From Ascidiella aspersa (lineage: Eukaryota), in assembly GCA_963924565.1 (NCBI GenBank), contig OZ004615.1, forward strand, positions 25,172,001 to 25,236,000: 64,000 bases of DNA. The letters are read 5' to 3'. Below the pieces are notes generated by a model. It had not been told where the DNA came from. It searched no databases and saw nothing but the letters and a program-made list of their open reading frames with translations. How positions within the stretch are numbered: position 1 is the first letter of the stretch; every line of letters begins with the position of its first letter. The position numbers and the translations under genes were made by a program. This document shows, in pieces, positions 28,601 to 43,700 of this stretch.

Positions 28601-31600
28601 AAATTAAGTAAATTGAAATGGCCAATCTGGACTGACCTAGCCAGCGCCAGAATGCAGAAAACCTTGTAAGACTGGGTTAAACTTCCAACCATCACCTTGA
28701 TACATTTGTGTGATGTGGCCTGAAGAAAAACAAGCAAAAAAGCACCAACATTTCCATCAGTCGTCAAGTCCTTAAATCTACCGTTAACAAACATTTTTTG
28801 ACAGTAAACCACATTTCGTTGGTCGCATGCGTCAAATTTCCACCTCCTTAACACAAGGTAGATCGGCAGCAGCAAAGCACGCACACATTCATCAGTCGTC
28901 AAGTACTTTTAACTCGTCTTAACGCGTGCGGCGCCTAAAGTCGTTTATTTGCTCACGGATCATCGTTGGATCGTGTTTACTTGTCATGTCTGCGGGCTTC
29001 TAGGACTTCAAAACCGGCCGAAAAAAAAACTTGTTGTTCCGTGCAAATCGAACGTAAACACGGCGCGAGTGCGCATGTCGTTCAAGGGCGCCGTGCCGCG
29101 ACGACTTACCGCGTAATAGCGGGCACTTTGCAACTTTTAGTTCGCTTTAAATGCTGTTTATGACTCTTGTCCGTGAAATTGTACTTGAGGAGAGGGACTG
29201 CGAATCCATTTGCCTGACTTGGTGTAAATGAGCCGTGAGAGAATTTCACGTAAAGGGCGTTTGCAATTGTGGGTATATGTAAATGGGACACTGTATAATG
29301 ATTGAGTTACATGTAGCGCAATATCCATTTTTAAGGTTATATTTTTTTGTATTTACGGTTATCGGATGCTTTATTATAACAATCAGTTAAAATTTTTAAA
29401 ATGAAATACCTGAACTAGGTTTACGATAAGTTTTACTCTTTGTTTTGTGCCTATTTTTTTTAGTTAAAATTCAAGGGTTTTGGGATTTAAAAAATATTGG
29501 ATGTTTCAAAAAGTCTGTTTCTATCACTGGAAAACATCTAGGAGTCTAGGCGTATACGCGTGCCCCAAACTCTTACATTTGTTTTTAGCATAAAGACTGG
29601 AGGTTGTAGTTAGACGTAGTACGAATAATACCGAAATTAATATCACTGTATGGGCTTTGACATCCATTCTACCTCCTACAATTTTATTTACAGCTGAAAT
29701 GTTACATAAATCTATATAACAATTATTAAATTGTTCGTCCAATAATAACTTTTGTTTATTTTATCATTTTCCCGGGCGAAAAATTTAATCATTGATACAC
29801 TGGAGTAATCTTACACTAATTATAATTATTTTAACCCCTCTCTGTCGCCCCCAGTGGACGGTGGATGGACGGACTGGTCGAATTGGGCCACCTGCAGCCC
29901 CGAATGCGTCCACCGGCGCCGTCGTACCTGCAGCCGACCGATACCCCACAACAGTGGGATGGTCTGCAAGGGGAGCGACATACAAACAAGCAACTGCTCC
30001 GGTGGACTTTGCGCTGGTAAGACAACTTCTCTTACCTTTTGGCGGATTTTTACCTGTTTTTTTTTTCTGCACGAATTTCTGTTTTCTCTGCGCTGGTAAA
30101 AATTTTTTGTCAGATTTTCTGCGATTTTTTTAAAAACGTAATGCCGCCGGGAGTTCGATGTAAAAAGTTTTATTTGTAGTCTTACATTGGTTTTTAAAAC
30201 TTCTTGATATACAAAATTGTTTTAACTTTGAGGATTGATAAAAAGTAAATACAAAAAAAACCTTGACTTTCAGGTTAATTTGCCGGGAAAAGTGTAAAAA
30301 TACTTCGTCTAATAACTCAATTTGCAATATTAAAGTTGCCTATTTTTTTCGTAAAGACGTAATGACGTGTATGTGTTAAATGTAAACTTTTTTTCTAAAA
30401 AGTGTTTAACTTTCAAAGTAAATCCTTCAAAGCTAAGATGCCATTTAAAAACAAATTTTGTAAAATGGTTTACACTTTAAAAGATTAGCCATTTATGTAA
30501 CCTTTTTTAATTTACATTAACAATTAACTACACTCAATCTAACCTTTGACCTTTTGTTTTTCCTCTTCTCCTCATTTCCTCTTCATTGTGACGTCATCAC
30601 CATCACCAACCAATCCTCATCAAATTGGCGGCAATCTACAGAAACGCGGAACCCGGCGACTCTAAGCGGTGAGAAAAAGCGCCTGTGCACTTCCCTTCTT
30701 TTCGCGTTCTTGTCGCCTGTCATATTCCGTCAAAGTATGCTCTGTTATTTTTGGCGCCGCTTCAAGCGAGCGGTCATTAGGGTCACTCGATACGCCCAGC
30801 GCATTACTTCACCACTTGCCGGACGCCTTGGCCTCTGGTCATTACTGGAACTTCGCCGGCATTTTTTTAACTTTTTTTTGGAGGATTTTTTTCGCGATTC
30901 GAAGTTGAGCCGATTTTGTTTCGACGCCTGGGAATTGAAATGTGTGAAAAAACGTAAAGCGGCGCCCAAGTTTGCGACAAATTTAAGGTCGAATCAAGGT
31001 CAAACTTGTTTTGAGGAACGCTAAAATGGATTTTCCTGTAAATAAAGCACCCTAACCAAAAAATGCCATTAAAACAAATTTTCGCCGATCTAAGAATATA
31101 TCAACAACAACAAAAAAACATTTAATTCCCTTAGCGCTTTTCTATTACACAATAAACCTAAATCACTAAACATTTGCTTTAAGTAAAAATAACTTAAAAT
31201 TGAAAAAAAAATTGCGTAGTACAATTGATTTCCTTGTTTAAAATAAACGATTATAAAGCCTTGACTAACTACAACAAAAACGCATTGAAACGATTTTTCA
31301 TCTTGTACACAAACAGCCAAAACTCTTGATTTAATCCCGGTAGCTCTTTGGTAGTGAAAGCAACTCCAAACCCACACAAAAGCAAAAAAAAATATCGCAC
31401 AAGGCGAACAACCAACCAAATAAGACAGATCGTTATTTGCCAAGAAAAGAAAAGTTATTTGCCCTCCACGTACTTACAAGCCAAACCGCAGAACCATTGC
31501 TCAGAAACTGTGAACCAGCAGACAGCTGCCGCAAAGCCCCACGTTATCTTACCCTCACCCTCTGGGACCGCTTTTTAACCCCGAAACGGACCCTTATAGG

Positions 31601-34600
31601 GCCTTGGGTAACCGGCCCCTGTGTTGTGATAATAAAGCGCCCGAAACGAAGTATGATCGTCGAAGCTGCGAAGCTAAAAACAACACGAGATAAAGTTTGC
31701 GCCTGTTTTTGTGAAAAATAACCCAATAGCGACCGTTTTTGGTTCGTTTTTACACTTTTTGTTGATTTATTTTTCGGAAAAATAAAGTGTTTTGATAAAT
31801 AAAGCCGTAACATTCGATCAAATCCACATACTTTGTTGTTTTTAGGCGTTTAGGTAAAAGCCCCTTGTAATCGACGTTAATCAGCTATTGCCGAAAGTTT
31901 TAATATGTGATATTTTACTAAACAGCTTTGTAGCAAAGACAAATGTTGCTCAAATCAATTCAAACGTAACAAAAATCGTAAAAATGTGATAATTTCTCTC
32001 GGCAATTTCGTATTGCATTTTTCTGACCCATATAGCGTTAAAAAATTCACAAACGACAAATTTACCTCAAAAAAACAACAACAAACAAACACGGATGACC
32101 GCGCCGCGTCCGCACTTTAAATCCAAGCAGCGCAGCGCGTTTTCCCGACGGCGTGAAGTCGGTTTTGCGGTGAACATTTAGCACCAGAAGAAAGATCAAT
32201 CACTCTCCACAAAACCCTTCATACCTCGGGGTGGGGCTTTGATCTGCGGGTTTTTTTGCCCCTCATGACCCCGCCATAGCTTCCTGTACGTTGTGTAATC
32301 AAAACTGGGGCTTCTAGGGGGTATTAGCCCCCTATTTTGCGAAGGGGGCGTTTTGGGGTGAACTGCGTTGCCTTTGATGCGGCTTTTTGGTTTCATGAGT
32401 TGTTTCGTAAATGACTCTCCTTGGACTTACGACATTTTAAAATGACTTTTTTACAACACTCGTACAAGGCATAATAAAAAGTAAATTGAATTATAACTAA
32501 ACATATATGACCTGACATGGACTTAACTTGCTATGACAACGACTTGAACTGGACTAAGTTATTTTGCAAATGACTTAACTGGATGACTTGTTTTTAATAC
32601 TGGTACAACGATAATTAAGGGTAAAAAACTAAAAAAAAAATATAGGGCTATGACGGTTTTTAAAGAGTTTCAAATCCACTCAAAGCCTCATTAAAAAAGT
32701 TGTCTGGATATTTTCAAATTCGCACGAAAACTAGCTTCCCCAGCCCGCCCTAAACATCATAACCTCCCATTTTCCGCAAACGACCTGTTTTTAAGTAGAC
32801 GCAGTTTAGACGCGAAAGCAGAGATTGTTCTGACAGCCAGATATGATCGATGGATTCTGGCACAGAACGACAAGAAATGGCTGGAGGTTGGGGTCAGAGC
32901 TGGGCAAACAAGCTCACAAGCTCAACACGAGTTGGTTTTTGACTTAGTGCGATCGACTAGACCGCGTGTTCAGTTACAAAACAACTTGTTGTCACTTCTG
33001 CTGCTAATTGGCTTAAAAAGTTCATTTTTCGTCCTATAGAAGCCTGTTTTGTCATTTTTTCTTGATGGGTGGTTGTAGTTTCGTATCGGCATGTCAGACA
33101 ATTAGGTCAACGGTTAAGAGGTTTAGATTAGGTTTTGGCAAGTAGCAAGAATTTTTGGAATGTTTTTAAACGAGCTAAAAACTCAAAAACAATTCTTATT
33201 TTAACTGAAAACTAAAAGCTGGTTTAGCGAAGTTTACTGCTGTAACTTCTGAAAAAAATTATTTTAAGCAATTCCAAAGTATTAAGTATTACAATAGATT
33301 TCAGTTCTTGACGTATTCTTGACAGGCATTTCACGCAAGATAAAAAAAAATTGTTTAACAATCGGTCTGTGAAGTAACCCAATATTTGCCAAAGGGCCGT
33401 AAAGCGGCTAGCAAGGGAAAGGTTATGGATAACCGAGTAAATATCGACGAAAAAACAACCTAATATATTAAAAAAAATTGCTTAAAAATGTGTTATAGCT
33501 TCGGTTTCATTAAAATTGTCCCGTATGAAGAGTATATTAGCGTGTTCATAGTATTGACTTTATACATAAGTTCGTGGCTTGCGCCTTTGCTCAAAACGCC
33601 TTCCTAGAAATATTTTTCGACCGAATTTCTTGGTGCTTTGTCAAAAACAACACTCGGCGATAATTTTCGCGAGACCCCCATGGACTGTGGGAAAGACTTC
33701 ACCTGTCAAACCCCCCTCACCCCATTAAGCAGAAAAAACAGCACTTATCGACTTACGCTCTGTGCCTAAAAGCAGCAGTAGCCCGCTACCGAAGCCCAAG
33801 TTATTTCACCGGCCCATTTTTTTGCCAAACACAACAACTTAACGGCGTTTTCTTTCCAGCTGTGTTTCAAACTAAATCGCGATTGGCAAAGTTCGTTTTG
33901 TAAAATTTAAAGCTTTGGCCAATTTAAACGTTCAGCAAATATATGAAAATATAGCGTTTTGATTTTGAACGTTTTTTGCACCAAATATTAGGAAAACGTT
34001 AACTTAATGAGCAATAGAACTGTTTTTCTAACCAAATCAAGTCTTACCCGTTTTTTTCTTAATTGTCCAATAGTATGTCAAGTTAAACTGGTTACAAGGG
34101 GTCCATATAAACACAAGTTAAACAGTTCCAATGAATTTTGGCATACAGGGCTCGAAATATGCCAGTTTTTCTGTCCACGCGTCTCAGTCAGCTTTCGAGG
34201 CCTGCGTTTGCCCCCTAACATTTTACCCATTCGAGAAAAAGCACAGAAAACGACGCAAGTTGTCATTCTTGCACGCTCCAGTTTCCAAAAGCACTAGATT
34301 CTGTGAGACGCGCGCCAGCTCTTGTTTACCCGGGTTGATTTGTAATCTTTGCAAACCCTTTGTGATTTACTGAAGCGTCGGCTGTGCGGCTGCTTAACTC
34401 TTTCGTAGCGAAAACACGTTTTTGCGCCGAAATTGCCGCTTTTTCTGCAATTAAATTGCAATATTCGCGAAAGAAGTAAGCCACTAAATTGTTTTAAAAT
34501 GAAACACTATTTACCTTGAATGGGTTTTAAGCCCACAGCCTTCCGACTGGACGGTCTTGGTGTGATTTAAAAGTACAATCCTTTCAAAGATACAGCTGTT

Positions 34601-37600
34601 TCAAAAACCTGGCGTTTCAAATGATTAAAAGGTTTTTTTAGTGAAAACTTTGTATTGCCACAGTTTTCGAAACTAAGTTAAAATATATTTTTAAAAAGAA
34701 GAAAAGCTATTCACACCGTCTTATCAAAATTTACTTTTGCCCCACCGAAGGGACATTTATGACCCAAACATGCGTTTTTAAAGGGTGAAAACGAGTTTCC
34801 TGGCTCTGTACGGGGGCAATGGAGCCCAAGTAGGTGCCAGTGTGCTCTACTAGGCGGGGAAACCTTCTTATCGTGGCCTGTTATCGCTCTGTGTCCACAA
34901 GGATTGATAGGCGGCTCCAAAACCGCTTAAAACCTATTTTGCGCGGTCAATCGACTTTTCTTGCGCGTCTTAAAACAACCAGTTTTTTTTCTGGAGGGCG
35001 ACGTTTGTTTGCTTTCCTGTATTTTCACTCTATCGCTAAAGTAAAATAAATACTTTTCTGTTTGAACGCTTAAAGGTTGTACTATAAAAAATATTTTTTA
35101 TTTTAACGTTGAAACCTGACTACTATTTACTGACCTTAAAATCCTTATTATTACTGCTGTATTTTGTAATAGATTGATGTTAATTTTTATTTACAAAGGA
35201 TAATTTTTCATGACAAAAAGGAAAAAAACTAATATAATTTCTTGCAAAAAAAATTTGCTTGGCTTAAAATCGTTGATTTTTTACTCTTAACGCTAAAAAG
35301 TCGGTTTTATTCAAAAATAACCAATATAATTAACTAGACTCAACCATTGGCATTCTTTCGTATTCAACCCGGCACCTTTCTTGCAGAAAACCAGAACCTG
35401 GTCCTGTACAGCTGTCTTTTCGTCGCGCTTGGCTTGCTGCTCATGATCGTCATAGCAACGCTCATTGTTTTTCGGAGAAAAAGGGGAGGGGCCTTCTCTC
35501 GTTCCGCTTCACCGGCTTACGCGTCAGGCAGATCAACTAGCTCGTATCCGATATCGGCCGTTGGAAACCACATGAGAGGTAGGTTAAATATGTCTAACAG
35601 ATTACTGCAGTTTAAAGTTTAAATTCATTTTAGCAAGGTAACTTAGATCTGAGTTAAACTGAAGACAAATTACTTAATTCTCTAGTGTAGTGGTTCGCAA
35701 ACCGGGGTTTAAAGGGGTCGGCATAACATCCTCTTATTTTATTGGCCATTTCGTTACATTAGTCGAGCGAATAACAAATGTTTTCAGTTTGTCAACAGTA
35801 GGTATCGTTAGTATAACTACCAAACTCAATATTAGAGTAGCCAACCAATCATGTTACCATAAAATGGAAATTTTCGCTGTTTTAAACATTTAAAGAGCTC
35901 TGCCATTATTTCAAAAAAGCATAGGAATCCTGCAAGGTGAAACTGTTTAAAAAACACTTTTCTAGTTAGTATATTGCCGAAATAAGATAGTCCGGGACAG
36001 TTATTTACAAAATAACTTATTAGGTCGAGAAAAAGAAATTTTTGAAATAAGTCAAGCCCAGCAATTTGAGTCATTTTAAAATAAAGTCATTTCTATAATA
36101 AATCAAGTCTAAATGAAGTCATGTCTTAAACAGTTTGACAACCACCTGATTTAACCGCTTTATTTTATTCTCACAGACGACTTCTGCATCATCCCGACCA
36201 AACCGAGCCCAGGGGGGGACGGGGGTAAAAAGCCCTTCACGTTTCCCCCTGCCTACTCGGCCCTGGACCACGCCTACCAGCTCAGCAACCAGCAGCAGGG
36301 GGGTCACGGTTCCACTCTGGGGCGTACCGGGGAACCCCCAAACCAGGCCGGGTACACCCTTCTATTCGGTGGCCAGACCTGGCAGCCCACTTCTGCCCAG
36401 CCAACTGCCCCCATTGTTTGTTACCCCCCGGAATTGGTGCGACACCCCCAGCTCGGATGTTCCCGTGATGACGTGTCCGTTGCGCGCGTGACGTCAGAGC
36501 CAGACGACGTGACGTCATCGATCTACCACCAGAGGTCGGTAGAAATTAAGTCAATTTAAAAAAAAAAGGAATTTTTTTTATGATTTAACATTGATACTTC
36601 GTTACGATTCTAAGTGTTTTCGGGTAAAAAAAGGAATAGGGTTGTACAAGTTGTGTACAATGGAACTTTTTTTCCCAAATTTGAGCTCGACGAACAATTA
36701 ACAGTTGATCGAATCTTTAACGTGCGTCTTTGGTATTTAATATTATTAAAAATGTAAAAACGAAAGCCAAATAAACAGTTTATTTTTTTTCAGCAATATT
36801 GAAGACTATTTTTTATTATTAATATTTATTGGATTTTTGCGCGGTTTTAAAATTGTTGAACAAGTTGCTTTTTTTCACATATAACATTAGTAAATCAATA
36901 CAAACAAAAAAAAAATACAACAGGAGTCTTAAACAGCCTTCGACTTTTAGGTCTCTATCGCCACCTGCCGACAACCCGCGTTCGCCCGACCTGGCCGCAA
37001 GTGGGCAGCAACACACGGGAGCGAAGCGAGTTCGGTTTGGATCGGGAGGGGGTCTTTTGCTGAGTCACGATTACGACTCGGGGTTCGAGGGGGAGTCGAA
37101 TTTAGCCTCGCAGCAGCCGGTGCTGGGCAAGAGCCAACCCGCGCTGGAAGAAAAAGACTGCGAAGGTAAGAATTTACGATTTTAAGAAAAGTTACAAATA
37201 CTAAAAAATTTTTTTTTGTTCGTTTACGACTTTTTGTTCGACTTCTTTTTTTGTTATTTTTTTGCGGTTACGAAAATAATTTTTCGTTCGGTTAATGCGA
37301 AAAACTTGTATTTTTTTCGGTTGCGAACGTGGCACATTTAAAAATACTGTTAAGCAACGATAAATGTCTTGAGATTTAGTTAAAAGCAGAAAAATGGCTG
37401 TTTTGGCTTTTAGAAGTTAACTTGGAGAACAAAACACGTTTTTTTCTAGTTGGATGTCTTAAGAATGAAACGGTTATATCGTTTCAAAACGATCAATAAT
37501 AATAATTAATCGTTAAGGTATTAAATCTTAACTAGGCTTTTACGAGATTCAAGTGCTCAAATAATAATAATAATAGTTAATGTAGTAAAAGTTGCTATTG

Positions 37601-38915
37601 ACGTGTTGAAAATTGCAAAAGCAGACGAAGACATGGCTTATAAAAATTTAATTTGAACACATTAATGCTATTTGTCTTAGGTTTTGTCCGCTTACAAAGA
37701 GTTCAGTAAATAGAATTTGGTCGCCAAAGCTTTGCTGTTTGACTTAGCGTTTACAGTAGTAATTGAGACGCGGCGAAAAGAGCTAACAAAAACTGACTAG
37801 CAGAAATGTATTCATCAACATGAATTAAAGAACACTATATACGGATCTGTTCATAAGTTTAATGGTGAAGATAACGGCCCAAATAGACATAAAAAGCGAC
37901 ATGCTTTATTTGGGCCGTTATTTTCACCATTAAATGAATTAAAGGGTTATTCGAAACTTTTAAAATTATATTTCTGCATGGGCTTTAACTATACCTTTCG
38001 TTTTATTTAGCCAGTTATTTCAGGCGTTTAAACTAAGGTTTTCACTCGGTACATGTTCACGACATGCTCACGTGTCAGCTTGTAATGCAGATAATTGCAT
38101 CGACAAATCTTCCATTAGCGGGTTTGTTTTAATAACTTTGGCAAAAAGCTTCCCAGTTAAACGACGATATTGGAAGGCAATGTTCAGGTCTAAGAAAACC
38201 TGACTTATCAGTGCATAACTAGGTATTAAGGTAAGGCGCAAATTAATAATTAAGGTTTAGAATTCGCAATTGGCAAAATGACAAACAGAAACGCTACTAG
38301 GAACCGCAGATTTAATAAATCTTTTTCTTTGTTTAACAGACGATTGGGTCGATTCGAGCGATTCTTCTGACGCTGGCTACAGCGGCTCCGATCACGTCAT
38401 CAGTGACGTACATCCTGACGTCATCTGTAAAAATACAGCGTCCGCCAATACACAAAGAAGTAAGCGAAATAACTTTTAGACAAAATCTTTATGCTTAATT
38501 TGAAATACGCTAAGATGATCGGTTGACGTTGGTTCGATGATTCTTTTGATTTTACATTTTGATATCATTTTGTTTTCATTAGGAAACAAAATGCATAATT
38601 AGCATTAAGCAAATTTATCGTTATTTAATTTTTTTTATAAATATTATATATTTTTCTATTGGTTTTATCGGGATTGTTGTGTTATATTTAACATGATTAT
38701 TTGCAAATTTTGTAATTCCTTATTTGATAATGAAAACAAATATTTTGATAATTAAAATATTAGAGGTTTAAAAAACCTTACTTAAGTTAAGCGGGAGAAA
38801 AATCTAAAGCCACAAAATTTTCTCCCCATTAAATCTAACTAAACTCCCGTCACAAAAACTAAACAATTTTCTTCTTTCCTTAGGCTCTGACGTCATCTTT
38901 CCCGCTACTACGTAG
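16497..38915 (+). CDS. UNC5: UNC5-like netrin receptor (Ig-Ig-TSP1-TSP1-TM) with atypical cytoplasmic tail; multi-exon, first coding exon uncertain
   Basis: Phase-consistent GT-AG exons: 16497-16637, 17140-17362, 19270-19412, 19750-19854, 20250-20429, 27135-27302, 29855-30016, (30642-30668), 35387-35578, 36177-36534, 36951-37165, 38340-38459, 38884-38915(TAG). UNC5-typical motifs: PRFIIEPQD, YWCQCNA..KSRKAYIRIAYL, LHCRPPNGRPAPRVEWLK, DSGNYTCVARNMASKRRS, VNGGWSTWSSW, VDGGWTDWSNW..NCSGGLC. Confidence 0.88.
17140..17362 (+). CDS. UNC5: UNC5-like exon, Ig1 N-terminal half
   Basis: RPRFIIEPQDHFVHRNSPALLTC...VKCNGE; gtgcag acceptor, AG|gtttgt donor. Confidence 0.92.
19270..19412 (+). CDS. UNC5: UNC5-like exon, Ig1 C-terminal half
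   Basis: VSRNEVESFFAHHEYWCQCNA...KSRKAYIRIA; T|gtaagt donor. Confidence 0.93.
19750..19854 (+). CDS. UNC5: UNC5-like exon, Ig2 N-terminal part
   Basis: YLGRNFNQEP...LHCRPPNGRPAPR; ttttcag acceptor, G|gtgcgt donor. Confidence 0.93.
20250..20429 (+). CDS. UNC5: UNC5-like exon, Ig2 C-terminal part
   Basis: VEWLKDD...DSGNYTCVARNMASKRRS; G|gtgaga donor. Confidence 0.93.
21782..21807. repeat. (AT)n microsatellite
   Basis: Direct inspection. Confidence 0.9.
22340..22433. repeat. ~42-bp tandem duplication
   Basis: ttttttttaacaggaaaaatgaaaaaaatgaaataatgaat present twice. Confidence 0.85.
27135..27302 (+). CDS. UNC5: UNC5-like exon, thrombospondin type-1 repeat 1
   Basis: VNGGWSTWSSWSGCGSKCG..RRLRTCTSPKPQNGGALC; phase 1-1. 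Confidence 0.94.
29855..30016 (+). CDS. UNC5: UNC5-like exon, thrombospondin type-1 repeat 2
   Basis: VDGGWTDWSNWATCSPECVHRRRRTC...NCSGGLCA; G|gtaaga donor. Confidence 0.94.
30642..30668 (+). CDS. UNC5: Candidate 27-nt juxtamembrane microexon (ETRNPATLS)
   Basis: ctacag acceptor, G|gtgaga donor, frame-preserving phase 1-1; ~150-nt AG-free zone, distal branch point (ctaac ~30539) and pyrimidine tract upstream. Confidence 0.6.
35387..35578 (+). CDS. UNC5: UNC5-like exon, transmembrane helix and juxtamembrane region
   Basis: LVLYSCLFVALGLLLMIVIATLIVF followed by basic RRKR stop-transfer. Confidence 0.9.
36177..36534 (+). CDS. UNC5: UNC5-like exon, Pro/Gly/Gln-rich cytoplasmic region
   Basis: GC-rich and open in frame (DDFCIIPTKPSPGG...FPPAY...SSIYHQ); tcacag acceptor, AG|gtcggt donor. 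Confidence 0.8.
36951..37165 (+). CDS. UNC5: UNC5-like exon, cytoplasmic region
   Basis: RSLSPPADNPRSP...DYDSGFEGES...EEKDCE; G|gtaaga donor. Confidence 0.8.
37858..37934. repeat. 28-bp inverted repeat / hairpin in an UNC5-like intron
   Basis: tttaatggtgaagataacggcccaaata ... tatttgggccgttattttcaccattaaa; one G-U pair on the + strand; 21-nt loop. Confidence 0.85.
38340..38459 (+). CDS. UNC5: UNC5-like exon, acidic cytoplasmic region
   Basis: DDWVDSSDSSDAGYSGSDH...; strong pyrimidine tract, A|gtaagc donor, phase 1-1. Confidence 0.75.
38884..38915 (+). CDS. UNC5: UNC5-like probable terminal coding exon (SSDVIFPATT*)
   Basis: Strong acceptor ttttcttctttccttag; in-frame TAG at 38913-38915. Confidence 0.55.
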
Positions 38916-39131
38916 CGCTCATCCGATTAACAAACCCGTTCTCGAATCGGCTCGACAGCGCCGCAAGTGGCCGTGTGCGACGAAACTCAGTGTTACGAAG
39001 AATTAAGCTTCGCTCGCTCTCGACCAATGAGAAGCCGGCGTGCGCGCGCACGGAACTGTGGGTCATGTACAGCTGTTTCTTCTTTTTCGCGCCGTTTTGC
39101 CGTCACGTGACTTCAGAAGCAGAGTTGCTAG

Positions 39132-39260: not shown

Positions 39261-41739
39261 CCATGACCTTGCGACCATGATTAGAATAAAAGTATTTTAT
39301 TTAGAAATAGTGATTTACGTTCGAAAGTGCTAACTAGCTATATAACGTGTAAAACAAACTTTGGTCTTGTACATTACAAACGTTTGAACGTTAGGATTTT
39401 ATTCTAGTCACTTATTTGACCATGACAATGACGTTATTTGGTGTCGGCCATATTCTTGTTTAAAGTATCGCGCATCGGAATGAAATATCAAGTATCTGGC
39501 ATCCCTAGTTGCCCCTTTAAACAATGTTCGATGTGCAGTATTAAGTGTCTTGCCTCCATACTTGGTGTAAATGGAGGTTCCAGTATCAACAGCAGATTGT
39601 CGTTTAAACCCTTTATTCCGTTTCTTTTGGTTTTTCGTTTTAAAGAGTTTTGAAGCTTTCAGCTTGGCAAAGAAAATGACTCTTGCTTTACTATTTGCCA
39701 TTTGAATAAGCAAACTTTCTTGTAAATCAGGAGTTCACCAAACTTTTTGCATAAAGGCGGAATATACAATTCTTTATTGACTTGATTGATTCTTCTTCTC
39801 TCTATGTTGAAAATGAATAAAGAGTTATTCGAAACGTCCAAAATGCTTTCTACTTGTGTATGGGCTTTGATATTCTTATTACGTCTTACTACAACCTCCA
39901 ACCATTATGCTCCAAAGTTTATTGACTTTATTTGACTTAATTATTATAAAACGAAGGAAACATAAAAAATATACTTGAATATATAGTGAAGGTGTTAGTT
40001 TAGAATTTCATCAACATTTAGCTAAGTTTTGCATTTAACAAACAGTTCCCTTATTATATATAAGCTATTGCTGCCAGGCATAATATCAAGTTTGTAGAGC
40101 TCTTCTGGCAAATGTAATTTTTTTTCCCTTATTAAACGGAATTTTTGGGCTGTTTTCTGAAATAAGATGAAGAATTAAAACCAACGGTTCGTAGTTCATT
40201 GGTCCCTGCTCTAAATTATTGGTGCATTGTTAGTCTTGGAAACAAACCGACCTGTCTGACAACTATAATTTCGCTCACCCTGCTGTTCAAATTCGCACAA
40301 ATTTGCCAAACACGTGTGTTCATATTTGTTAATATTTGTATTATGCCGATGCATTGAAAGGGTATTATTTGAAGCTCCACTTTGTATTATAACGAACACT
40401 TCCTATTTGTGTTGAAACAGTCAACAGTTATCTCCGACGCTAAAACCTTTACTTTGTATGTTGTTTTTTCTATGCATTCTACCAAATAAACAAAAGCAGT
40501 CGCGCAAATATTAGTTGTGATCTACGGTAAAGTCCAATGGCAGGCATTTTTCTAAATAACTGGCTCTTAAAATTTTGAGCAAGTGTTGTAATTGGACCAA
40601 GTTTCTAGACGTTATGCCACCAGCTTGACTTGCAATCTGATATCTTGCTGCTGTGTTTTAAAACTACAGACAAGTTGTTTGTGTTTTTTAATATTTGGTA
40701 AGTTTCTCAAGTGTCATGACTCCTAAAACATTATGTTACTGTTTTATAAATTATCTACATTTCACAAGTGGAAGAACCTTTTTTAAAAGCGCTATTTTAC
40801 ATAAAATTATGTTTTTTTAATTATGGCTACCTTAGTTTTATAGAAACGTCATGCTTTTGTCATTTACACTTGACTCTTAAGGCTTTATAAATAAAGGAAA
40901 AGAATATTTCAGTCCGCAATTAAGTTAGAGAGTGCTGCAAATTTATACGACATCAGAGAAGTGGTCGACATTTATTGCAGTAGTTTTTCACCATTTCGTG
41001 ACATTATTTCAATAGCCAACTGACTTGAGCTACAGTTAGTATATCAGCTTACTAGCACAACAAAAGTGTAATCAAACACTGCTATTTGATTGCAGTTATT
41101 TAAGAAGACAAAAAGCATTTTTACCAAATACCAAATTAAGGCTATCGTCATTATTTTGTTTTGCCGCCAAATTTGTCTCAATAAATGCCAAGCGACGTTA
41201 ATACTAAAGGTCAACAAAAGGACAGCCTTTCACATAACTATGGAATAAGTTAAACGATGTTTTCGCAAAATGTAAATTAACTAGTCTTAAAGGTAACAGT
41301 ATTTTGTTCTGCTGTAAACTATAGTTAAGTCAGAATAAAATTGGGCGGTCAACAGAATTAGCGTATTGCTTTTAGCAAGGTATTTTTACTGAAAAGAATA
41401 GTTTGAAAAATATAAAAGCTGTATTTGCGAATGTGTAAATGCATTTGTAATAGTCAACCCTATTTATTCTCATTTGTTAGGTTCACAATATTCCGAGCAT
41501 CTGTTTGAAAGCAATATAACCAGTTAAACCTTGTTTGTAAGTGCGCAGTTTTAATTTAATGTTTTGCTTTCAATTGTTCGAGGTCACCAACCGATATCAA
41601 AATAAAAGGTCAACAAGAGGACACCGAGTCCGCGAAAAAAAAAACGCTTGAAGAAAAATCAACTTGTGTTTTAGTACGACAAGTTTGTCAAAAGATTAGA
41701 GTGCTTATTTTAATTGCTGTAAGTTGGCTAAGGGCTGAA

Positions 41740-43700
41740 ATGGAAGGCATTGAACAACCTGCACCGATTCCCCGTCGCATTTTTGTCGGTGGTTTCGACA
41801 AGCAGACCACTGAAGAAGAACTAGAGAAAGTTTTTCAGGTGATTGCAGCGTTTTTAGCCTGAACAGATTTATGCATGCAGTAAATTTTAGACTGGAAGTG
41901 TAACATACCATACTTAAAACGAGTTTTATATAGAGGTAGCTTGGGCGCTCGTCTAGAATCCTACCACAACGAACATTATTTGGGTTAGGGTGCCGGTTAG
42001 CGTTTGGGTTTGGGTGAGTCCAGTAATAGTGTTAAACAATATTACTTGACCTACCCACACCCAAACACTAACCGACACCCTAACCCACATATTATGCATT
42101 GCTTAATAATCATTTCAACGTTGTGGTAGGATTCTAGACCAGCGCCGTAGCTTGTGCTTGGTATAGAAGTGAAGTATATCCAAAACGATTAATAAATTTT
42201 AAATATAATAGTTGGAGGTTGTAGTTAGACGTAGAATGAATATCAAAGCCCATGCAAAATTAAGTAGCATTTTGTGAACGTTTCGAATAACTCTTTCTAG
42301 TTGGGCGTAGAATAAATGTTAAATTCCAGGTAGCATTAATCGCCAGATGCTATATTTTATCTAAAGAGATAATAAATATTGAAATTTAGCTTTATTTTAG
42401 TTTAAGAATATGAAAATTGCAAATAGGAACTACAACTACCGTCTGTTATTTATTTTATAACATGGTATTTTAGTGCTAACATGAATTTATTGCTCGACAG
42501 TTTATCGCTAACAAAACGAAAAAAGAGAAACAATAAGTTATAGTTTTATCCCCCATATGAGTAGCGTATCTTATGGAACAGAATATTACAAAAGTATTTA
42601 TTTTGTTGCAGTTTTGCGGCCGAGTTGTGGACGCGAATATTGTGAAGGAAACAGCAAATAACGCTTACGCTTTTGTGACCTTTTTCTACGAGGATTCTGC
42701 AGCCATGGTGCTCTCACAAAAGGTTAGTTGCTCCATTGCGTCGCAAAGACACATGATATTTGGTGTTGTATTCCGACACCGATAGTTTGATAAAAAGTAT
42801 TGGTAATGGAACCTTATCAGAATTGAGTTATTACTGTTATCAAATAGGCAAAAAGGATTAAAATTTGATAATAAATTAACACATTACCTGGAAATGATAC
42901 AAGCTCGTATCAAAACGTCTTATCAAGATGATGTCGATCTACTCGACCTTTTTGGCTTTGCAATTTATTATCAAGCTATATTACAGATCCGTGCATAGAG
43001 TACCCAAGAATTAAAATTATAAAGTAAAATTGTAGTTTTTTTAGGTTATTCGGCAAGAATTCGCTTCAGCCTACGTAAACGTTTTGATTTTCTCTTCGAT
43101 TTTTAATAAAACTTAACATCGGGTGCCGGCCCATATCTGCAGCTATTTACCTATGCTCGTTTTGTAATTAAAATTCCCATGACGAAAACCTGCAGATATT
43201 TTCCACAAAAAAGGCTCGGTCATATTAAAGTAGAAAAGCAACTACTAAATTTAAATAAGGAAAACATCGATTGGTTTCACTATGAGAACCGCTAAAGGAC
43301 ATTTTTCATCTTTGAAGTAAAATGTTTACACGCCGTACAATTGAAATTCGCCGAGATTAACAAGACTGTGTTATTTTTTTTTAAAGAATAAGGTTTATTT
43401 TTGTCATGGAATTAAATTATCAAAACGTTCACCTACAGTAAGCTTTATGTCTAAAACTGGCTTATTTCTTTCTATTTTTACCCTATTTTTAGACTCTTCT
43501 TATATAATTCGCCTCTTAATAACAAGCAATGTTTTTGCCACTTACTTTACGTAAAGAGCCAACATTATCACTTTTCTTTCTTGTTACAGTACAGCTTCTT
43601 TATTCGAGGGCAGCGTCTCCGTGTTTCACCTGCATATCTCAGAAACAAACCACGGCCCACTTATTTGTGGAGCTGTGTACATCACCAATGCTTTTACTAG
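41740..43700 (+). CDS. BOLL: Boule/DAZ-family-like single-RRM RNA-binding protein, 106 aa, 3 coding exons
   Basis: Exons 41740-41838, 42612-42722, 43590-43700 (all phase 0). IPRRIFVGG (RNP2; Boule has IPNRIFVGG), TTEEELEKVF, AYAFVTF (RNP1), GQRLRVSPA; AATAAA at 43843 and 43904. Confidence 0.75.
41944..42146. mobile_element. Foldback MITE (GG-terminal TIR, 8-bp TSD; Merlin-like) in RRM gene intron 1
   Basis: 28-bp TIRs ggcgctcgtctagaatcctaccacaacg / cgttgtggtaggattctagaccagcgcc (1 mismatch); perfect TSD GTAGCTTG; internal inverted GGGTTAGGG-like arms. Confidence 0.88.

What the first reader, a model, noticed from the sequence alone, without database searches (positions are those of the whole stretch)
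30533..30674. 27-nt microexon between TSP1-2 and TM with a dense upstream NOVA-type YCAY cluster
Seen in sequence: frame-preserving exon 30642-30668, no AG dinucleotide for ~150 nt upstream, and a branch point and pyrimidine tract displaced ~60-100 nt from the acceptor. Seven YCAY motifs fall within 30572-30620 (TCAT, TCAT, TCAT, TCAC, CCAT, TCAC, TCAT). Established: NOVA binds YCAY clusters, upstream binding promotes skipping, and vertebrate UNC5B has a short NOVA2-regulated exon at the equivalent juxtamembrane position. Inference: a possibly ancient chordate NOVA-UNC5 microexon switch.
Basis: partly seen in the sequence, partly recalled or inferred. Interest (0 to 1): 0.75.

Follow-up and report, generated by a model that had tools for sequence, protein, structure and literature searches.

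The report
Real 27-base UNC5 stalk exon
A tiny 27-base piece of a sea squirt's netrin-receptor-like (UNC5-like) gene is truly used in its RNA and sits behind an unusual control-like stretch, but whether it is ever switched off, by the splicing protein NOVA or anything else, remains untested.

Summary
Exon 30642-30668 is bounded by AG and GTGAGA and keeps phase 1. No AG lies in the 151 nt upstream. Exactly seven YCAY sit at 30572-30620.

New here: one spliced contig of public run X3 joins 30016 to 30642 and 30668 to 35387, both GT..AG. So the microexon is real and lies in the main mRNA of that sample. No joint that skips it was seen. The data could not have shown a minor form: contigs drop rare variants, and the raw RNA run laid only 12 reads.

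The acceptor differs from four neighbouring acceptors. The AG-free zone and the YCAY density are both rare in 488,000 strand-bases of this genome. But local dinucleotide shuffles give the same YCAY total, so the cluster is a G-poor, CA-bearing pyrimidine tract.

The genome has a NOVA orthologue with KH1, KH2 and KH3. The exon occupies the same place as vertebrate UNC5B exon 8.

The gene also lacks a ZU5/death-domain tail.

Verdict: a real exon and a plausible but unproven switch.

The parts
27135..27302 (+). TSP1-1 exon (168 nt, phase 1 in and out)
   Evidence: Pfam TSP_1 E 2.1e-9. Acceptor AG and donor GTGAGG read. The loose end of the X3 spliced contig matches 27268-27297.
29855..30016 (+). 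TSP1-2 exon (162 nt), donor GTAAGA at 30017
   Evidence: Sequence. Pfam TSP1 families match weakly (E 2e-4 to 2e-3). X3 exon depth is 38-51 and the joint leaves at 30016.
30489..30639 (+). 151-nt AG-free, G-poor zone (7% G) upstream of the microexon acceptor
   Evidence: AG gaps of 150 nt or more are 17 of 24,623 in the genome sample. The four neighbouring acceptors have 41-56 AG-free nt.
30507..30550 (+). Branch-point-like motifs: TTAAT 30507, TTAAC 30517 and 30524, CTAAC 30539, TTGAC 30546. They lie 92-131 nt from the AG.
   Evidence: Motif scan. The branch point was not mapped experimentally.
30550..30588 (+). Displaced pyrimidine tract
   Evidence: Sequence. The pyrimidine fraction at -100..-41 is 0.78, against 0.43-0.57 at the neighbours. 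At -20..-1 it is 0.50, against 0.70-0.90.
30572..30620 (+). Cluster of seven YCAY (six UCAY, one CCAU) between the putative branch point and the acceptor
   Evidence: The RNA fold of 30500-30700 is no more stable than shuffles (z +1.35).
30642..30668 (+). 27-nt microexon coding the extracellular stalk (TRNPATLS plus split Glu codons)
   Evidence: X3 contig joints 30016 to 30642 and 30668 to 35387, both GT..AG, depth 50.9. Frame. The stretch is unique in the genome.
30669..30674 (+). Donor GTGAGA
35387..35578 (+). Transmembrane exon (192 nt), donor GTAGGT
   Evidence: Sequence. The hydrophobic run followed by RRKR is in the ORF. Four X4 raw RNA reads and one X3 contig splice from 35578 to 36177.

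Best explanation
This is a real 27-nt exon of the genome's only UNC5-like gene. It codes nine residues of the extracellular stalk between the second thrombospondin repeat and the membrane. It is included by default.

Its 3' splice site is reached from a distant branch point (about -92 to -121) across a 151-nt AG-free, G-poor, unstructured tract. Exons built this way are typically regulated cassettes. The UCAY-rich part of the tract lies between the branch point and the AG. It most likely serves as a landing pad for a repressor, with NOVA as the leading candidate. In NOVA-expressing cells (neurons) the exon would then be skipped. Skipping would cut the stalk from 14 to 5 residues.

By analogy with long and short UNC5B, the length of the stalk would decide whether a sheddase can reach it.

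Shown: the exon, its inclusion, the anatomy of the acceptor and the presence of NOVA.
Inferred: skipping, NOVA binding and the effect on the protein.

My odds: exon real 0.95; regulated cassette about 0.55; NOVA a direct regulator about 0.3.
For: - Both joints of the spliced X3 contig are GT..AG and are absent from the DNA runs X1 and X2.
- The acceptor is unlike four neighbours: 151 against 41-56 AG-free nt, proximal pyrimidine fraction 0.50 against 0.70-0.90, and 7 YCAY against 1, 2, 1 and 4 in -100..-1.
- Rarity in the genome sample: 17 of 24,623 AG gaps are 150 nt or longer, and 2 clusters of 7 or more YCAY occur in 488,000 strand-bases.
- It is the only cluster of 5 or more YCAY on either strand of the window.
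- There is no YCAY cluster after the two flanking donors or before the TM acceptor (0-1 each). By the rule quoted in PMC8358048, the only predicted NOVA effect is therefore silencing.
- The tract is unstructured (z +1.35).
- NOVA KH1, KH2 and KH3 exons lie in order on G000:C6 (E 6e-19, 2.5e-15 and 1e-26 against Nova structures).
- Human exons with AG-free zones of 100 nt or more are rare and enriched for alternative splicing (PMC1431707, passages).
- UNC5B exon 8 has the same position and an upstream YCAY silencer.
- Long UNC5B is shed and short UNC5B is not (PMC12480741, sections 13, 14 and 18).
- Ciona Nova uses YCAY clusters.
Against: - No skipping joint (30016 to 35387) appeared in any of the four runs. 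The one informative sample shows inclusion as the assembled form.
- The YCAY total equals what the local dinucleotide content gives (P 0.34-0.44). The AG-free zone and the YCAY density both follow from one property, lack of G.
- Four of the seven motifs overlap in a 13-nt CAT/CAC string.
- Nothing is known about conservation.
- In Ciona Agrin, Nova enhances inclusion from downstream sites. Repression by tunicate Nova from upstream sites is not shown in the passages I read.
- The protein has no ZU5/UPA/death domain, so the vertebrate apoptosis read-out cannot apply.
Confidence: 0.5

Rival explanations
1. A constitutive microexon. The 27 nt are always included. The distant branch point and long pyrimidine tract are simply how this very short exon is recognised, and the YCAY motifs are a by-product of a G-poor C/U/A-rich tract.
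For: Only the included form was seen, as the single assembled path through TSP1-2, microexon and TM at depth 50.9. The YCAY total is not above local dinucleotide shuffles. Without the nine residues the stalk would be only five residues long, which may not be workable (frames).
Against: The acceptor architecture is rare. In human data it goes with alternative splicing. Vertebrate UNC5B, and by a screen's listing UNC5C, have skipping exons for this region. The RNA data here could not have detected a minor or tissue-limited form: 12 raw reads, and contigs drop rare variants.
Confidence: 0.4
2. A regulated cassette, but controlled by other proteins that bind pyrimidine-rich or CA-rich RNA (a PTB-type or hnRNP L-type repressor or activator; these binding preferences are recalled, not tested) rather than by NOVA.
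For: Distant-branch-point exons are classic PTB targets (PMC1431707, passages). The tract holds UCUU twice and CAC three times.
Against: Only 2 UCUU, no UCUCU and no CACA, against 6 UCAY. The SRRM4-type UGC signal is absent (0 TGC).
Confidence: 0.2
3. The exon arose independently in tunicates at a spot that tolerates insertions (a disordered stalk between two phase-1 exons). Its likeness to UNC5B exon 8 is convergent, whatever regulates it.
For: No sequence comparison of the stalk peptides was possible. The lengths differ (27 against 33 nt). Position alone is weak evidence. The tunicate gene has a different cytoplasmic tail.
Against: The position is the same, the exon is frame-preserving, and a YCAY cluster sits upstream as in mouse, human and zebrafish. 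Two vertebrate paralogues are listed with juxtamembrane skipping exons.
Confidence: 0.5

Closest known systems
Vertebrate UNC5B exon 8 (UNC5B-delta8), skipped under NOVA2 (PMC8358048; passages read)
   Same: A short frame-preserving exon between the TSP1-2 exon and the TM exon. It codes extracellular juxtamembrane residues and has a cluster of more than 3 YCAY within 45 nt in the upstream intron.
   Different: 27 nt against 33 nt. Skipping is not observed here and NOVA dependence is not tested. The sea-squirt protein has no ZU5/UPA/death domains, so the apoptosis output cannot be the same. No peptide similarity was tested.
Long and short UNC5B as isoform-dependent shedding substrates (PMC12480741; sections 13, 14 and 18 read)
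   Same: The exon sets the stalk length between the last TSP1 domain and the membrane. Here the stalk is 14 residues with the exon and 5 without, read from the frames.
   Different: No shedding data exist for this protein. The stalk sequence is unrelated as far as can be judged.
Ciona Agrin Z microexons, included under Nova through intronic YCAY clusters (PMC12445529; passages read)
   Same: A tunicate microexon with a nearby intronic YCAY cluster. A tunicate Nova exists and reads YCAY.
   Different: There the clusters lie downstream and enhance inclusion. Here the cluster lies upstream, which predicts repression. UNC5 is not mentioned in that paper (0 occurrences).
Distant-branch-point exons marked by AG exclusion zones (PMC1431707; passages read)
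   Same: An AG-free zone of 150 nt or more, with branch-point-like motifs and a pyrimidine tract at its upstream end.
   Different: That class was defined in human. Its frequency and its link to alternative splicing in tunicates are unknown. The branch point here is unmapped.

Membership tests
UNC5 netrin receptors | N-terminal Unc5-type Ig domain | tested here: met
   PF25609 E 7.4e-12 on the exon at 17184-17372. The two exons of this gene are the only matches in the genome.
UNC5 netrin receptors | Second Ig domain, two TSP1 repeats, then a single transmembrane segment | tested here: met
   I-set E 9.4e-9 and TSP_1 E 2.1e-9. TSP1-2 is weaker (E 2e-4 to 2e-3). The hydrophobic run followed by RRKR was read. 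No TM predictor was run.
UNC5 netrin receptors | Cytoplasmic ZU5-UPA-death domain module | tested here: not met
   The 3 ZU5 matches in the genome lie on C2 and C4, none on C9. The tail exons give no Pfam domain. The open frames from 36155 to 38476 are low-complexity. The gene is therefore UNC5-like, not a full family member.
UNC5B exon-8-type stalk cassette | Short frame-preserving exon between the TSP1-2 exon and the TM exon | tested here: met
UNC5B exon-8-type stalk cassette | Both included and skipped mRNAs exist | tested here: inconclusive
   Only inclusion was seen, in 1 contig of 1 run. The raw RNA run X4 laid 12 reads, none on the TSP1-2 exon or the microexon.
UNC5B exon-8-type stalk cassette | Descent from the same ancestral exon (peptide or intron-phase match with vertebrates and other chordates) | not testable with these tools
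   No vertebrate or other tunicate UNC5 locus could be fetched.
NOVA-regulated exons (YCAY-cluster map) | More than 3 YCAY within 45 nt, within 200 nt of the regulated splice site | tested here: met
   7 motifs (5 non-overlapping) at -70 to -22. The definition is as quoted in PMC8358048.
NOVA-regulated exons (YCAY-cluster map) | NOVA protein encoded by the organism | tested here: met
   G000:C6 KH1, KH2 and KH3 exons hit Nova-1/Nova-2 structures best.
NOVA-regulated exons (YCAY-cluster map) | Motif enrichment beyond local base composition | tested here: not met
   Observed 7-8 against a shuffle mean of 6.1-7.3 (P 0.34-0.44). Clustering alone gives P 0.014-0.11.
NOVA-regulated exons (YCAY-cluster map) | NOVA binding and NOVA-dependent change of inclusion; conservation of the cluster | not testable with these tools
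   This needs CLIP, a knockout or a minigene, and orthologous introns.
Distant-branch-point (AG exclusion zone) exons | AG-free zone of 100-150 nt or more, with branch-point consensus and pyrimidine tract at its upstream end | tested here: met
   151 nt; CTAAC at -99 and TTGAC at -92; tract 30550-30588.
SRRM4/eMIC-type neural microexons | UGC motif close upstream of the acceptor (the feature itself is recalled, not taken from a call) | tested here: not met
   0 TGC in the 151-nt zone.

The most novel reading that the evidence does not exclude
The stalk cassette and its upstream NOVA silencer were already present in the common ancestor of tunicates and vertebrates. That would make UNC5 a second NOVA target kept for over 500 million years, after Agrin. 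Because the sea-squirt receptor has no death-domain tail, the ancestral purpose of the switch would be control of stalk length, and so of ectodomain shedding or ligand response, rather than control of apoptosis.
Probability: 0.12. Interest if true: 0.75.

Novelty: new member of a known kind. Interest (0 to 1): 0.45.

Why it matters
If the exon is skipped in Nova-expressing neurons, it would be a second deeply conserved Nova target in chordates, after the Agrin Z exons shown in Ciona in 2025.

It would also give a simple system for asking what the UNC5 stalk exon does without the death-domain pathway: one UNC5-like gene and a small larval nervous system. The minigene and CRISPR assays already published for Ciona Nova could test this directly.

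If the exon is constitutive, it is an ordinary, correctly predicted microexon with an unusual distant branch point.

Tried and rejected
1. Close relatives, to test conservation.
- The search for homologous proteins with the open frame around the TM exon gave 4 candidates, none scored. With the frame around the TSP1-2 exon it gave no candidate. The tool's length window shuts out full-length proteins.
- The search of protein representatives with the Ig1 exon gave 55 hits at E 0.001 or below. Of these 55 I read 15. They were multi-repeat Ig proteins, vertebrate-like UNC5 fragments and short fragments. None was a close tunicate orthologue, and none covered the stalk region.
- Cross-species conservation is therefore untested.

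2. Allele variation in the YCAY region. Two loose ends in read laying, at 30551 (X2) and 30568 (X3), looked like divergent alleles. Both map exactly to one other locus, G000:C3:16840022-16840099, which shares 18 nt with the window. I rejected them as evidence of polymorphism. They also mean that X2 gives no real coverage of the cluster.

3. RNA structure: 30500-30700 folds no better than shuffles.

4. Rfam: 0 matches in 29800-35700.

5. Repeat origin of the exon: 30400-30800 has only its own match in the genome.

6. Papers.
- No paper links UNC5 with Nova in tunicates. The search 'Nova, YCAY, Ciona' gave 3 papers (2 listed), with UNC5 absent from the one I read. The search 'Unc5, ascidian, netrin' gave 4 papers, none on splicing by title or abstract.
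- Supplementary files were not opened. Supplementary Figs 3 and 16 of PMC8358048 (motif positions, disorder) and the screen tables of PMC12480741 (the UNC5C exon) may bear on the comparison.

7. The spliced model was searched exon by exon only.
Full report
WHAT IS THERE. The window is G000:C9:25172001-25236000 of a 308.6-Mb genome. Earlier notes of this scan call the animal a sea squirt; I did not test that label. The plus strand carries an UNC5-like gene:
- an Unc5-type N-terminal Ig exon (PF25609, E 7.4e-12)
- an I-set Ig exon
- two TSP1 exons
- an exon with a hydrophobic membrane span followed by RRKR.

I read the exon borders from the sequence and checked them against RNA:
- TSP1-1: 27135-27302
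- TSP1-2: 29855-30016
- TM exon: 35387-35578
- next exon: from 36177.

All of these junctions are in phase 1.

THE OBSERVATION.
- A 27-nt segment, 30642-30668, is bounded by AG and GTGAGA and is open in the required frame.
- The nearest upstream AG is at 30487-88, leaving 151 AG-free bases.
- Seven YCAY lie at 30572-30620, in the order given.
- Branch-point-like CTAAC and TTGAC lie 99 and 92 nt from the AG, ahead of a pyrimidine tract at 30550-30588.

IS THE EXON USED? Yes. I laid four public runs of the same species on 29800-35700. The kind of run X3 is not on record, but it behaves as RNA:
- Exon bins have depth 24-38, while intron bins have 0-10.
- The depth of the bin that holds the microexon equals 27 nt at depth 50.9.
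- X3 holds one contig of depth 50.9 with two GT..AG joints, 30016 to 30642 and 30668 to 35387.
- The DNA-like runs X1 and X2 lack these joints.

No run shows a joint from 30016 to 35387. That absence is weak evidence. Contigs drop rare variants. The only raw RNA run (X4, about 6% of it read) laid 12 reads, none on the TSP1-2 exon or the microexon.

So inclusion is shown in one sample of unknown tissue. Skipping is neither shown nor excluded.

IS THE UPSTREAM REGION SPECIAL? Compared with four neighbouring acceptors of the same gene, this one stands out:
- AG-free bases: 151 against 41-56
- pyrimidine fraction in the last 20 nt: 0.50 against 0.70-0.90
- pyrimidine fraction at -100..-41: 0.78 against 0.43-0.57
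- YCAY in the last 100 nt: 7 against 1, 2, 1 and 4.

The window's two strands hold no other cluster of 5 or more YCAY per 49 nt. I then added 18 arbitrarily placed 10-kb stretches of the genome, giving 488,000 strand-bases in all:
- 2 clusters reach 7 YCAY: this one and a TCA microsatellite.
- 27 clusters reach 5.
- 17 of 24,623 AG-to-AG gaps reach 150 nt.

Against this, dinucleotide-preserving shuffles of the local 66-153 nt give the same total of YCAY (P 0.34-0.44). Only the clustering is marginal (P 0.014-0.017, or 0.11 for the core). Four of the seven motifs overlap in one 13-nt string.

The fair description is a rare, G-poor (7% G), CA-bearing pyrimidine tract. The AG-free zone and the YCAY density both follow from it, so they are not two independent signals. 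The tract is not structured (z +1.35), matches no Rfam family and is unique in the genome. It has 6 UCAY, 2 UCUU and no UGC.

A NOVA orthologue exists. Three KH exons lie in order on G000:C6 (16458877, 16467249, 16468367). Their best matches are Nova-1 KH1 (E 6e-19), Nova-1 KH2 (E 2.5e-15) and Nova-1/2 KH3 (E 1e-26), far ahead of PCBP, hnRNP K or IGF2BP.

In Ciona, Nova is necessary and sufficient for inclusion of the Agrin Z microexons, and it acts through intronic YCAY clusters (PMC12445529, passages). Those clusters lie downstream and enhance inclusion. The passages I read do not show repression from upstream sites in a tunicate.

COMPARISON WITH WHAT IS KNOWN.
- Vertebrate UNC5B exon 8 is 33 nt and codes a disordered extracellular stretch next to the membrane. 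It is skipped when NOVA2 binds a YCAY cluster in intron 7. The arrangement is kept in human, mouse and zebrafish (PMC8358048, passages).
- The same exon codes the stalk between the TSP1 domain and the membrane. Long UNC5B is shed by metalloproteases and short UNC5B is not. The cleavage site is 16 residues from the membrane (PMC12480741, sections 13, 14 and 18).
- That paper's screen also lists UNC5C among genes with juxtamembrane skipping exons.
- Human exons with AG-free zones of 100 nt or more are rare (0.68%) and enriched for alternative splicing (PMC1431707, passages).

The sea-squirt exon matches these in position, frame, small size, upstream cluster and distant-branch-point build. Reading the frames exon by exon, the stalk between the last TSP1 cysteine and the hydrophobic span is 14 residues with the exon and 5 without.

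It differs in three ways:
- No skipped form is known.
- No comparison of the stalk peptides was possible.
- The protein has no ZU5/UPA/death-domain tail. The genome's 3 ZU5 matches are on other chromosomes, and the tail exons are low-complexity without Pfam matches.

This gene is the only Unc5-N-domain locus in the genome. It is UNC5-like rather than a full member of the family. The apoptosis read-out of UNC5B-delta8 cannot carry over.

WHAT COULD NOT BE DONE.
- Exon-level protein searches found no close relatives.
- The exhaustive representative search with the Ig1 exon gave 55 hits. Of these 55 I read 15, and none was a close tunicate orthologue or covered the stalk.
- Two apparent divergent alleles in the reads turned out to be contigs of another locus that shares 18 nt with the window.
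- The spliced model was never joined. All searches were made exon by exon.

VERDICT. The position matches UNC5B exon 8, the architecture is that of a regulated exon, and NOVA is present. But alternative use, NOVA dependence and ancient common descent all remain inference. The YCAY count does not exceed what the local composition gives.

My odds:
- exon real: 0.95
- regulated cassette: about 0.55
- NOVA a direct repressor: about 0.3
- ancestral chordate NOVA-UNC5 switch: about 0.12.

It is a new member of a known kind. It is of moderate interest because it is cheap to test in an established system.

Noticed in passing
window 35387-39110, and genome-wide: This UNC5-like gene is the only Unc5-N-domain locus in the genome. 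It has no ZU5 on its chromosome, and its tail exons are low-complexity.
   Followed up: partly
G000:C6:16458877-16468567 (+), outside the window: A NOVA orthologue. Its KH1, KH2 and KH3 exons lie in order and match Nova-1/Nova-2 structures best.
   Followed up: partly
window 32361-32754: Word depth in the DNA-like runs jumps to about 2,000-2,400, against about 58-110 around it, with many loose ends. This is a high-copy repeat inside the long intron.
   Followed up: no
window 31967-32360 and 32952-33739: A few raw RNA reads of X4 lie inside the intron, all with the first mate on the minus strand, at depth about 0.3-1.3. They may be pre-mRNA or an unannotated transcript.
   Followed up: no
window 30551-30568 and G000:C3:16840022-16840099: An 18-nt pyrimidine string is shared with an unrelated locus on another chromosome. 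It makes contigs of that locus lie partly on the window and mimic divergent alleles.
   Followed up: yes
window 41701-42785: Two plus-strand open frames give weak RRM_1 matches (E 0.015 and 2e-4). A separate RNA-binding-protein gene seems to start about 3 kb after the UNC5-like tail.
   Followed up: no
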